DNA of 64,000 nucleotides, taken from assembly GCF_947568905.1 (NCBI RefSeq), contig NC_079171.1, positions 37,262,001-37,326,000 on the forward strand. The letters run 5' to 3'. Of this stretch, positions 21,352 to 22,639 are shown one piece after another. This DNA comes from Ostrea edulis. Lineage: Eukaryota. The notes under the pieces are model-generated. The model was given only the letters and a program-made list of their open reading frames with translations. It had not been told where the DNA came from and made no database searches. How positions within the stretch are numbered: the first letter of the stretch is position 1; each line of letters starts with the position of its first letter. The position numbers and the translations under genes are program-made.

Positions 21352-22639
21352 ATGAGCCTGAGTAGAAGTCGTGAGAAGTCGTTAGTCACAAACAGTGATA
21401 GCAGTCACGGCCCAGTGAATGTCGCAGAACCCGGTATATCCATCGCACCTACGCTAACGCAGGAGATAATAAGCACGATGCAAGCAATACCTAATATACA
21501 AACAACATTGGGGGAATTATCGGAATCTCTCAGAGTGATCAAAGAACTAACTCAAGATATAAAGAACATTAAGAATGACCTGTGGGAGGAAGATGGTTTC
21601 GACTTCTGCATCTCTCATATTGCTGAACAACAAGAAGTGGACTCAGGAAACATTCAGGTGCTGAAGCAAGAGAACAAAATGTTGAAAGAAGATATAGATA
21701 TGTTAAAATCTGTAGTTATTAACTTAGACAGAACCGTCAGAAAACAGCAAAGCGAGATCACAGATTTAAAGTCAAGATCAATGAAGCAGAACTTACTCAT
21801 TCACAATTTACCCGAAGAAGAGAATGAAAATCTTTTCAAGAAAATCCCACAATTGATTAAAGAATACCTGGGAGTCGAAACGACTTTTGCAAACATACAC
21901 CGAAACGGGCCTAAAAATCCGGGTAGACCAAGAACTATTACGGGTCGACTAGAGAAATTTACTGATAAGGAGAAAGTCCTCCAAGCACAGAAAGACAAAA
22001 GAACTAGCAAAGGGTCTGGCTCTACAGAACAATCAAATACACCTTTCTACATTACCCACAAAGACCAGTAGAGGTAGCTGAAAATCGGGAAAAAAACTCC
22101 AAGAAATAAGTAACCGGTATTGGAAAGAGAATGTGAAAACACGTTTTGCAGAAGACAAGTTAGTTTTTCCTAACGGAAACACATACAAAGAAAAAGTGTT
22201 AAAACCAAAGCTTGAAAACATTTTGCTAATGGATCAAGCAGAAAAAGAGGCACTTCAACAGATCCAGATGTCGACACTAGAAACCTCCACAGAAGGGAAC
22301 GATTTTAAAATCGCGGCATCTACCACAGTGACCTTTAACCAGGTCAGAAACTTCTAGAAAAAAGTTGTTATGGACTCAAATTACTCAAACGCGGATCACA
22401 GTTTATTGGTATATCGATTCACAGACAAAAACGGTTTGATCCACGAGGTGTATAACGACGATGGTGAGCACGGGGCTGGGAGAAGACTTCTTAAAGATCT
22501 CCAATCTCTCCATGTTACAGACATGACATGTATCATCTCTAGATTCTTCGGAAAATATCTTGGCTATCGTAGATTCCAAATTATGGAAAACCTCGCGGCA
22601 GACATTGTTCTCGCGCACCGAGGTGAATCGTTGGGGTAA
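21352..22639 (+). pseudogene. LINE ORF1: coiled coil + L1-type RRM/CTD + C-terminal IMPACT/YigZ (UPF0029)-like domain
   Basis: SRSMKQNLLIHNLPE..IHRNG..PRTI (L1-type ORF1). After two frameshifts near 22060-22095 and an in-frame TAG at 22355-22357 it reads GNDFKIA..VRNF*KKVV..ADHSLLVYR..NDDGEHGAGRRLL..CIISRFFGKYLGYRRF. Confidence 0.75.

What the first reader, a model, noticed from the sequence alone, without database searches (positions are those of the whole stretch)
22290..22639. LINE ORF1 ends in an IMPACT/YigZ (UPF0029)-like domain
Seen: in frame with the ORF1 C-terminal part (through one TAG) is F..A....V..F.K......ADH....YR......DDGEHGAGRRLL..L.......IISRFFG..LG..RF. Established: this pattern, especially DDGE.GAG..LL and R.FGG..LG, defines the ancient domain of IMPACT/Yih1 and bacterial YigZ. 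In IMPACT, GCN1 binding and GCN2 inhibition depend mainly on the RWD domain, which is absent here. Inference: a Tx1/L1 lineage captured this domain as an ORF1 accessory module, perhaps acting on RNA, ribosomes or stress signalling. This might also account for some of the IMPACT-like gene models in mollusc annotations.
Basis: partly seen in the sequence, partly recalled or inferred. Interest (0 to 1): 0.8.

Follow-up and report, generated by a model that had tools for sequence, protein, structure and literature searches.

The report
Oyster LINE coat protein carries IMPACT domain
[quoted passage not shown] Many long-separated lines of this jumping gene have kept that domain under selection, which gives a new clue to a domain whose job is still unknown.

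Summary
Observation confirmed. Window 22292-22636 (+) matches Pfam UPF0029/Impact_N (E 1.9e-13, 50.8 bits, cut-off 27). It lies in frame behind the rest of a LINE ORF1, through one TAG.

The window (Ostrea edulis) holds a dead L1-type LINE at 21168-27003. Intact sisters encode a 428-aa ORF1p: coiled coil, RRM, CTD, then UPF0029. Its predicted fold matches human L1 ORF1p and also Yih1, TT1547 and YigZ. A spacer of about 730 nt follows, then an endonuclease/reverse-transcriptase ORF2 that aligns end to end with human L1 ORF2p.

- **Linkage:** 36 of 39 genomic UPF0029 loci examined are tied to ORF1 and/or ORF2. The same layout occurs in several deeply diverged families in Ostrea and in Pinctada, and in three anonymous contigs; ORF1-UPF0029 proteins also occur in Saccostrea and Crassostrea.
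- **Origin:** the transposon domains form their own clade. The intron-split host IMPACT gene sits elsewhere, so the capture is old.
- **Selection:** pN is 0.12-0.17 against saturated pS.
- **Annotation:** many copies are named "protein IMPACT homolog".

The function is inferred, not shown. No RWD domain is present, so a GCN1-type mechanism is unlikely.

This scan already noted the same fusion on other DNA of this genome (s1-274686, s1-311844). No paper describing it was found.

The parts
21168..27003 (+). Dead copy of an L1-superfamily LINE (family 'A' of this report), 97-98% identical to copies with intact ORFs
   Evidence: blastn against L041, L042 and L043 gives a shared 5' end at 21168 and a shared 3' end at 27003 with an AATAAAAAAAAA tail.
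21168..21351 (+). 5' UTR
   Evidence: Lies between the common 5' boundary of the copies and the ORF1 ATG.
21352..22639 (+). ORF1, broken in three places. The intact form is 428 aa.
   Evidence: The intact 428-aa ORF is seen in L004, L006 and L008.
21460..21789 (+). Coiled-coil part of ORF1p (residues 37-146 of the intact protein)
   Evidence: AlphaFold2 predicts helices 37-78 and 83-146. The family profile hits the human L1 ORF1p coiled coil 6fia at E 4.8e-4.
21790..22008 (+). RRM of ORF1p (residues 147-219)
   Evidence: The AlphaFold2 model shows a strand-helix-strand-strand-helix pattern in residues 147-219. Foldseek matches 2yko, 2ldy and 2w7a. The family profile hits 2ldy at E 2.1e-5.
22048..22177 (+). 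CTD of ORF1p (residues ~233-275), crossed by both frameshifts
   Evidence: Alignment A1 shows the conserved PFYITPQ...RKKL...KLVFPNG block. The 2ldy and 2yko alignments reach profile position 252. Frames are shown.
22054..22055 (+). Lesion 1: one base missing relative to other copies (frame shift)
   Evidence: read-laying table 4 shows contigs of three runs carrying an extra C behind 22054. Frames are shown.
22089..22090 (+). Lesion 2: two extra bases relative to other copies (second frame shift)
   Evidence: read-laying table 4 reports '2 left out' at 22089 in contigs of three runs. Frames are shown.
22355..22357 (+). Lesion 3: in-frame TAG inside the UPF0029 domain, where other copies read Tyr
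   Evidence: At 22357 the window has G where contigs of other runs have T. Intact copies read NFYKKV.
22292..22636 (+). UPF0029 / Impact_N ('ancient') domain at the C-terminus of ORF1p. The stop codon is at 22637-22639.
   Evidence: Pfam PF01205 scores E 1.9e-13 on the window piece and 7.2e-15 on intact ORF1 residues 321-418. The family profile hits Yih1 6bqi at E 2.8e-21. The fold matches 2cve at rmsd 2.2 over 119 columns and 1vi7 at rmsd 2.6 over 120 columns.
22640..23236 (+). Inter-ORF spacer, with its 3' part lost. It contains a C-run of variable length around 22836-22848.
   Evidence: The full spacer is about 730 nt in copies such as L004.
23237..23278 (+). 42 bp that match no other copy. 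They sit where about 369 bp are missing: the end of the spacer, the ORF2 start and roughly the first 125 codons of the endonuclease.
   Evidence: blastn of the window against L041 shows L041 3763-4132 absent from the window. ORF2 of L004 starts MSFNLSC..., whereas the window resumes at ...YAPTKDNPSEQ.
23279..26814 (+). ORF2 remnant (rest of the APE-type endonuclease, RT, C-terminal zf-RVT), split into at least 6 open pieces
   Evidence: The ORF list is. The intact sister ORF2 carries Exo_endo_phos, RVT_1 and zf-RVT and aligns end to end with human L1 ORF2p 8sxt at E 1.6e-108.
26815..27003 (+). 3' UTR and short A-rich tail

Best explanation
SHOWN. Window 21168-27003 is a dead, fairly young copy (2-3% from intact copies) of an L1-superfamily LINE of Ostrea edulis. 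Its ORF1 protein has the L1 'type II' layout (coiled coil, RRM, CTD) plus a fourth, C-terminal domain. That domain is a bona fide member of the UPF0029/Impact_N family, the 'ancient' domain of IMPACT/Yih1 and YigZ. It is part of the transposon, not of a host gene. It was acquired once, or very few times, long ago by an ancestor of several now deeply diverged LINE lineages of pteriomorph bivalves and of at least two further lineages from unnamed hosts. It belongs to the eukaryotic IMPACT type rather than the sampled bacterial YigZ type. It has been kept by purifying selection as strongly as the rest of ORF1.

INFERRED mechanism, about 35% of my belief. The domain is an accessory docking or ligand-binding module of the ORF1p trimer. 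It uses the conserved UPF0029 surface (His, YR, DDGE-x-GAG, SR, G, G, RF) to tie the LINE ribonucleoprotein to a conserved partner of the translation machinery, either the ribosome or an RNA or nucleotide ligand. This could help co-translational capture of the element's own mRNA, or translation of ORF2 across the unusually long 0.5-1.1 kb spacer. It cannot act the way IMPACT acts on GCN1/GCN2, because the RWD domain that does that job is absent.
For: **Domain identity.**
- Pfam PF01205 scores 50.8 bits on the window piece.
- It scores 50-73 bits on intact ORF1s of five O. edulis families.
- The family profile hits Yih1 6bqi at E 2.8e-21.
- The AlphaFold2 model has pLDDT 83, and above 90 over the domain.
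- Foldseek matches 6bqi, 2cve (rmsd 2.2 over 119 columns) and 1vi7.

**ORF1p identity.**
- Foldseek matches the human L1 ORF1p trimer 2yko at E 5.5e-7.
- The profile hits 2ldy, 2ykp and 6fia at 2e-5 to 5e-4.

**Transposon context.**
- ORF2 carries EN, RT and zf-RVT.
- ORF2 aligns end to end with human ORF2p at E 1.6e-108.
- Copies share an A-tail and have different flanks; one copy has a ~50-bp target-site duplication.
- At least 70 UPF0029 matches occur in the genome.
- Of 39 loci examined, 36 have ORF1-N upstream and/or EN downstream, and 23 have both.

**Other hosts and lineages.**
- L068 holds an intact ORF1 and ORF2.
- L050 and L072 show the same layout.
- P0074 aligns to the family profile over the whole architecture by hhalign, E 1.3e-43.
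- Pinctada locus L052 carries a broken ORF2 downstream.
- Saccostrea and C. virginica proteins appear.

**Origin.**
- In the tree, 41 mollusc transposon domains form one clade (support 93/89).
- The host IMPACT groups with metazoan IMPACTs.
- All IMPACT-type rows are separated 100/100 from YigZ-type bacterial rows.
- The host gene has an RWD domain and two phase-0 introns inside the domain.

**Selection.**
- pN is 0.12-0.17 against pS 0.70-0.81 in the domain in three lineage pairs, equal to the rest of ORF1.
- Family signature residues are invariant across transposon and IMPACT rows.

**Mechanism lead.** Yih1 and IMPACT associate with ribosomes, and the ancient domain's function is described as unknown (PMC4503747 and PMC7140605).
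Against: - Nothing tested here contradicts the structural part.
- For the mechanism there is no direct evidence. The ribosome-binding region mapped in Yih1 overlaps the linker, not clearly the ancient domain.
- No RNA run could be confirmed, so even transcription is not shown.
- In family A the canonical R-[FYW]2-G-G motif is one residue short (SRFFGK), which could mean relaxed function in this particular family.
- Single origin is only moderately supported: the transposon label forms one group in 44% of bootstrap trees, and L050 is unresolved.
- The bacterial outgroup came only from candidate-phyla-radiation genomes.
Confidence: 0.85

Rival explanations
1. The domain is a small enzyme or ligand-binding module acting on RNA, a nucleotide or a small molecule, rather than a docking module. 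Under this reading it gives ORF1p a catalytic or sensing activity.
For: A compact set of polar residues (His, Asp-Asp-Gly-Glu, Arg) is invariant from IMPACT to all transposon lineages. That pattern is typical of an active or ligand site. PMC4503747 states that the invariant features cluster in loops on one face of YigZ and Yih1. A source name gives the fold class as 'ribosomal protein S5 domain 2-type', which from general knowledge includes nucleotide-using enzymes.
Against: No activity has been reported for any family member in the papers found. Nothing here tests catalysis.
Confidence: 0.25
2. The domain mimics IMPACT and tunes the GCN2/eIF2alpha stress pathway in favour of the transposon.
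For: It belongs to the eukaryotic IMPACT type of the family. IMPACT/Yih1 is a GCN2 inhibitor.
Against: The inhibition is carried by the RWD domain competing for GCN1. No RWD is detected in any transposon ORF1.
Confidence: 0.08
3. Neutral passenger: a host IMPACT cDNA fragment was picked up recently by one LINE copy and amplified without any function.
For: The domain is intronless while the host gene has introns, as expected for capture through RNA.
Against: The domain is present in several lineages only 27-52% identical over the whole ORF1, and in several oyster genera and Pinctada. The transposon clade is separate from the host IMPACT. pN is far below pS, and the domain is as constrained as the RRM/CTD part. 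Signature residues are invariant.
Confidence: 0.03
4. The ORF1-UPF0029 genes are a domesticated host gene family, and their proximity to ORF2 is incidental.
For: NCBI annotates them as ordinary protein-coding loci.
Against: In 26 of 39 loci an endonuclease ORF follows 0.5-1.25 kb downstream on the same strand. There are full elements with a shared 5' end, an A-tail and a target-site duplication. Many copies are truncated or frame-shifted. Copy flanks differ.
Confidence: 0.03

Closest known systems
Human/mammalian LINE-1 ORF1p (type II ORF1: coiled coil, RRM, CTD; PDB 2yko, 2ldy, 6fia)
   Same: Same three-part architecture and fold (Foldseek E 5.5e-7; profile E 2e-5 to 5e-4). It sits upstream of an ORF2 that aligns end to end with human ORF2p.
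   Different: It carries a fourth, C-terminal UPF0029 domain of about 115 aa. Pfam Transposase_22 does not reach E 0.01. The inter-ORF spacer is 0.5-1.1 kb.
IMPACT / Yih1 (RWD + UPF0029 'ancient' domain; PDB 6bqi)
   Same: The ancient domain is homologous (profile E 2.8e-21). The signature residues are shared. It is of the eukaryotic IMPACT type in the tree.
   Different: There is no RWD domain and no linker region, so this is not an IMPACT orthologue. The real host IMPACT gene lies on another chromosome and is intron-split. Host IMPACT reads DDGETQAG where the transposon copies read DDGEHGAG.
Bacterial YigZ / TT1547 (UPF0029 + DUF1949; PDB 1vi7, 2cve)
   Same: Same fold of the N-terminal domain (rmsd 2.2-2.6 over about 120 columns).
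   Different: There is no DUF1949 C-terminal domain, because ORF1 stops right after UPF0029. YigZ-type rows are separated from IMPACT-type and transposon rows with 100/100 support.
Other LINE ORF1 accessory modules (esterase or PHD of CR1/L2-type ORF1, CCHC knuckles; Khazina & Weichenrieder types, Metcalfe & Casane 2014, Schneider et al. 2013)
   Same: Same principle: ORF1 is modular and recruits host-derived domains (PMC4120745 and PMC3905857 listed; PMC5203782 read).
   Different: UPF0029 is not among the ORF1 domains listed in those surveys. The large L1 survey (PMC5203782) contained no molluscs and does not mention the IMPACT domain.

Membership tests
UPF0029 / Impact_N (Pfam PF01205) | Score above Pfam's gathering cut-off (27 bits) | tested here: met
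   The window piece scores 50.8 bits. Intact ORF1s of five families score 50.5-73.3 bits.
UPF0029 / Impact_N (Pfam PF01205) | Family signature residues (A-x-H-N, Y-R, D-D-G-E-x-x-A-G, S-R, G, G, R-F) | tested here: met
   These positions are invariant or nearly so in an alignment of IMPACTs and transposon domains and across 30 transposon ORF1s. In family A the R-[FYW]2-G-G stretch is one residue short (SRFFGK), whereas other transposon families keep SRWFGG.
UPF0029 / Impact_N (Pfam PF01205) | Fold of the YigZ/Yih1 ancient domain | tested here: met
   Foldseek matches 6bqi at E 8e-6, 2cve at E 3.8e-5 (rmsd 2.2 over 119 columns) and 1vi7 at E 8.9e-5 (rmsd 2.6 over 120 columns). Model pLDDT is above 90 in this part.
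IMPACT / Yih1 protein (GCN2 regulator) | N-terminal RWD domain that binds GCN1 | tested here: not met
   No RWD (PF05773) hit occurs in any transposon ORF1. True IMPACTs in the same scan do show one, and the host gene has RWD exons.
IMPACT / Yih1 protein (GCN2 regulator) | Inhibition of GCN2; actin and ribosome association | not testable with these tools
   These need biochemistry.
YigZ | C-terminal DUF1949 domain after UPF0029 | tested here: not met
   ORF1 ends 8-10 residues after the Pfam match.
L1-type (type II) ORF1p | Coiled coil, then RRM, then CTD | tested here: met
   Foldseek matches 2yko, 2ykp, 2ldy and 2w7a. The profile hits 2ldy at 2.1e-5, 2ykp at 5.7e-5 and 6fia at 4.8e-4.
L1-type (type II) ORF1p | Pfam Transposase_22 / Tnp_22 match | tested here: not met
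   These families are not listed at E <= 0.01 for any of the ORF1s. Homology is visible only at profile and fold level.
L1-superfamily LINE | ORF2 with APE-type endonuclease, RT and C-terminal Cys-rich domain; A-rich tail; target-site duplication | tested here: met
   Pfam finds Exo_endo_phos, RVT_1 and zf-RVT. ORF2 matches 8sxt at E 1.6e-108 over residues 4-1231. The tail is shown, as is a ~50-bp duplication at L043. No duplication was found for the window copy.
Tx1 clade of the L1 superfamily | Placement by RT phylogeny with reference Tx1 elements; many members are target-specific | not tested
   No reference RT set was at hand. Flanks of four copies differ, so this family is not target-specific. 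Martelossi et al. 2023 list Tx1, and no other L1-group clade, among the 11 LINE clades recovered in bivalves (PMC10294476), which makes Tx1 likely by inference only.

The most novel reading that the evidence does not exclude
The UPF0029 'ancient' domain is in general a module that engages the ribosome or translation machinery. L1-type LINEs of bivalves, and of at least two other unnamed hosts, recruited it into ORF1p to couple the ORF1p trimer to the ribosome translating their own bicistronic mRNA. This would secure cis-preference and/or re-initiation at ORF2 across a 0.5-1.1 kb spacer. The transposon would then be a natural 'RWD-free' experiment that isolates the long-unknown function of the domain shared by IMPACT and YigZ.
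Probability: 0.15. Interest if true: 0.8.

Novelty: new variant of a known kind. Interest (0 to 1): 0.62.

Why it matters
**A clue to an unknown domain.** The UPF0029 domain is conserved from bacteria to mammals, and the papers read here still call its function unknown. A selfish element has kept it, without the RWD domain, for a long evolutionary time inside an RNA-packaging protein. This points to a self-contained activity useful to an RNA/ribosome-centred life cycle, and it offers a tractable system for testing that activity.

**A new ORF1 module.** It adds a fourth module to the L1-type ORF1p architecture. That extends the known modularity of LINE ORF1 proteins to molluscs, which the large L1 survey did not cover.

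**A practical annotation warning.** Dozens of RefSeq models in oysters named 'protein IMPACT homolog' or 'IMPACT-like' are transposon ORF1s. The real O. edulis IMPACT is a single intron-split gene on another chromosome. Gene-family counts and expression studies of IMPACT in bivalves are therefore at risk.

Tried and rejected
- **Remaining genomic loci.** The linkage tally therefore rests on 39 loci with 1.5-kb flanks.
- **Expression.** The look-up of sequencing runs returned no run on record as RNA. Read laying on four runs gave contigs only. One 'RNA?' run holds two ~150-nt contigs, one of them inside the domain, but its kind is a guess, so no claim of transcription is made.
- **Target-site duplication of the window copy.** None was found; the longest shared word is 9 bp.
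- **Pfam on the ORF1 N-part.** Only weak coiled-coil look-alikes came up (Spc7, GAS, BORCS6 and others). I rejected them as composition matches.
- **Phosphomannomutase hits to ORF1 residues 238-324.** At E 0.15-0.5 I rejected them as chance.
- **Bacterial outgroup.** The pattern scan of genome contigs found only two loci. Their relatives gave 11 more, all small genomes, most reading TGA in frame. This is a narrow sample of YigZ diversity.
- **Large HMMER search of protein representatives.** Not run: it was flagged as costly and returns no taxonomy. The taxonomic range of the fusion is therefore a lower bound.
- **Literature.** UPF0029 with retrotransposon gave 0 papers. PF01205 with LINE gave nothing relevant. 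UPF0029 alone gave 5 unrelated papers. YigZ gave mostly author-name noise.
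Full report
**1. The observation**

Reading window 22070-22639 in the frame of the ORF1 C-terminal part gives ...KLVFPNGNTYKEK...STEGNDFKIAAS...VRNF. A TAG follows at 22355-22357. The frame then continues KKVVMDSNYSNADH...VYRF...DDGEHGAGRRLL...IISRFFGKYLGYRRF... up to the stop at 22637-22639.

- The 89-aa piece after the TAG scores E 1.9e-13 and 50.8 bits against Pfam PF01205 (UPF0029, cut-off 27), covering profile positions 27-106 of 107.
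- The genome-wide family scan covers 12-106 through the TAG.

**2. The element in the window**

The word search identifies the genome as Ostrea edulis. The window is C8:37262001-37326000.

Comparison with three sister copies fixes the element at 21168-27003 (+), 97-98% identical to them. All share the same 5' end (ACGTGATCAGAGCC...) and an AATAAAAAAAAA tail.

The window copy is dead.
- In ORF1, one base is missing after 22054, two extra bases lie at 22089-22090, and a Tyr codon has become TAG at 22355-22357 (contigs of other runs).
- About 369 bp are replaced by 42 unrelated bases at 23237-23278. The lost stretch held the end of the spacer, the ORF2 start and roughly the first 125 codons of the endonuclease.
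- The rest of ORF2 is split into at least six open pieces.
- No target-site duplication was found for this copy.

**3. The intact form**

L004, L006 and L008 carry an uninterrupted 428-aa ORF1. Pfam places UPF0029 at residues 321-418 (E 7.2e-15) and finds no RWD.

An AlphaFold2 model was built on 30 diverse homologues. Its mean pLDDT is 83, and above 90 over the last 130 residues. It shows the following parts:
- a long helical coiled coil (residues 37-146);
- an RRM-like alpha/beta unit (147-219);
- a small CTD;
- a linker;
- a compact alpha/beta domain (307-427).

Foldseek against the PDB returns two separate sets of hits.
- The first is the human LINE-1 ORF1p trimer (2yko E 5.5e-7; also 2ykp, 2ykq, 2ldy, 2w7a).
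- The second is Yih1 (6bqi, 8e-6), TT1547 (2cve, rmsd 2.2 over 119 columns) and YigZ (1vi7, rmsd 2.6 over 120 columns).

A sequence profile of the family agrees: 6bqi at E 2.8e-21; L1 ORF1p RRM-CTD 2ldy at 2.1e-5; 2ykp at 5.7e-5; the L1 coiled coil 6fia at 4.8e-4.

Downstream lies a spacer of about 730 nt. After it comes ORF2 with Exo_endo_phos, RVT_1 and zf-RVT. The ORF2 of a close relative (L068) aligns from residue 4 to 1231 with human L1 ORF2p (8sxt, E 1.6e-108).

The element is therefore an L1-superfamily LINE. Whether it belongs to the Tx1 subgroup was not tested. Martelossi et al. 2023 list Tx1, and no other L1-group clade, among the LINE clades recovered in bivalves (PMC10294476). The four copies examined have unrelated flanks, so this family is not target-specific.

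**4. Linkage of the domain to ORF1 and ORF2**

The genome holds at least 70 UPF0029 matches, many inside open frames of 407-435 aa.

I examined 39 distinct loci with 1.5-kb flanks.
- 33 have the L1-type ORF1 N-part directly upstream on the same strand.
- 26 have an endonuclease-coding ORF 0.5-1.25 kb downstream.
- 23 have both.
- Only 3 short fragments have neither.

At least five O. edulis families carry the fusion, with ORF1s only 27-52% identical to family A, and four of these sit upstream of an endonuclease ORF.

The same layout occurs elsewhere.
- A metagenome contig holds an intact 427-aa ORF1 and a 1259-aa ORF2 (L068).
- A more distant 347-aa ORF1 sits with a 1028-aa ORF2 (L050).
- A 511-aa ORF1 sits with a 1245-aa ORF2 (L072). 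It aligns to the family profile over coiled coil, RRM, CTD and UPF0029 (hhalign E 1.3e-43).
- In Pinctada imbricata a broken ORF2 follows the fusion.
- Named relatives come from Saccostrea cucullata, S. echinata and Crassostrea virginica.
- The ESM Atlas clusters that resemble the protein are recorded as Mollusca.

L043 is an internally deleted copy. It keeps an intact ORF1 and the 3' end and is flanked by a duplication of about 50 bp, a footprint of retrotransposition.

**5. Origin of the domain**

The true host IMPACT gene lies on C1 at about 36.939-36.956 Mb. It has RWD exons, and its UPF0029 domain is split by two phase-0 introns with GT/AG borders.

I built a maximum-likelihood tree of 71 domains (118 columns).
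- The 41 mollusc transposon domains form one clade (support 93/89).
- The 511-aa lineage is a weakly supported sister (86/53), and L050 is unresolved.
- The oyster IMPACT sits among metazoan IMPACTs.
- All IMPACT-type rows, the transposon rows included, are separated with 100/100 support from YigZ-type bacterial rows.

The transposon label needs one change on the best tree, but this holds in only 44% of bootstrap trees.

My reading is that the capture was old. It came from a eukaryotic IMPACT-type gene, not recently from the oyster gene, and it happened once or very few times. The domain is intronless, which fits capture through RNA, but that step is inference.

**6. Selection**

I compared three independent lineage pairs: family A against L068, family B against L070, and family E against a Saccostrea echinata copy.
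- In the domain, the nonsynonymous proportion is 0.12-0.17, while synonymous sites are near saturation (0.70-0.81).
- The rest of ORF1 shows 0.12-0.19.

The domain is therefore as constrained as the RRM/CTD part. Because of the saturation, only an upper bound (omega well below 1) can be stated.

The family's signature residues (A-x-H-N, YR, DDGE-x-x-AG, SR, G, G, RF) are invariant or nearly so across IMPACTs and all transposon lineages. Family A has a one-residue shortening of the R-[FYW]2-G-G stretch.

**7. How it probably works**

Shown: a selected, C-terminal UPF0029 domain on a trimer-type RNA-packaging protein, without RWD.

Established from the literature read here:
- GCN2 inhibition by IMPACT/Yih1 runs through the RWD domain competing for GCN1.
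- Yih1 and IMPACT associate with ribosomes and actin.
- The function of the ancient domain is unknown, and its invariant residues cluster on one face (PMC4503747, PMC7140605).

Inference: the domain supplies ORF1p with a conserved binding or ligand surface aimed at the translation machinery or RNA.

All lineages have an unusually long ORF1-ORF2 spacer of 0.5-1.1 kb. The domain might therefore help to keep the ribosome or the RNP on the bicistronic mRNA.

I give the docking model about 35%, an enzymatic or ligand role about 25%, and GCN2 mimicry under 10%.

**8. Novelty**

No paper in the searchable library joins UPF0029, PF01205 or YigZ with retrotransposons. The large survey of L1 ORF1 domains had no molluscs and no IMPACT domain (PMC5203782). 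The bivalve transposon survey does not mention it.

Earlier notes of this same scan (s1-274686 with a follow-up, and s1-311844) report the same fusion on other pieces of this genome. My tests agree with them.

I class it as a new variant of a known kind: modular LINE ORF1 proteins.

**9. Limits**

- Transcription is not shown.
- The taxonomic range is a lower bound.
- The outgroup sample is narrow.

Noticed in passing
window 22640-23236; L004 1771-2498; L044, L045, L046, L050, L068, L072: Every lineage of these LINEs has an unusually long non-coding spacer between ORF1 and ORF2: about 500, 550, 560, 730, 890, 1040 and 1080 nt. Human L1 has a spacer of only tens of nt (from memory). How ORF2 is translated is open. 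In the window the spacer holds a C-run (about 22836-22848) whose length varies between copies.
   Followed up: partly
L043 (G000:C10:26705000-26714999) 1624-4639: An internally deleted copy keeps an intact 428-aa ORF1-UPF0029 and the 3' end but lacks nearly all of ORF2. It is flanked by a duplication of about 50 bp, with 18 extra bases at the 5' junction. It may be an ORF1-only non-autonomous derivative.
   Followed up: partly
L053, L054, L063-L066 versus L057-L062 (small bacterial genomes that read TGA in frame): The sampled candidate-phyla-radiation bacteria hold two kinds of UPF0029 gene. One is a YigZ-like kind. The other is a short kind that ends right after the domain, scores 90-116 bits against an IMPACT/transposon profile, and groups with eukaryotic IMPACT-type rows in the tree. 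This may reflect gene transfer between eukaryotes and these bacteria, or an old split of the family.
   Followed up: partly
G000:C1 about 36939200-36956300 (L049, L047, L048): The genuine O. edulis IMPACT gene has RWD exons, and its UPF0029 domain is split by two phase-0 introns. It reads DDGETQAG where the transposon copies read DDGEHGAG.
   Followed up: yes
window 27506-28492 (+): Directly downstream of the LINE lies a 328-aa open frame with Cys/His-rich B-box-like motifs followed by a coiled-coil-like stretch, giving a TRIM-like look. It was not analysed.
   Followed up: no
window 21100-21167: The 5' flank of the LINE (about 21120-21153) is itself a very high-copy short repeat. Contig depths there are 10-50 times those of the LINE (tables 2 and 8).
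   Followed up: no
P0074, P0202, P0203 (L051, L072, L073): The 511-aa ORF1-UPF0029 lineage carries about 65 extra residues after the domain. One source names it 'Fe-Mo cluster-binding NifX family protein', evidently a mis-annotation. One member comes from NCBI assembly GCA_046766195.1, whose organism the tools did not give.
   Followed up: partly
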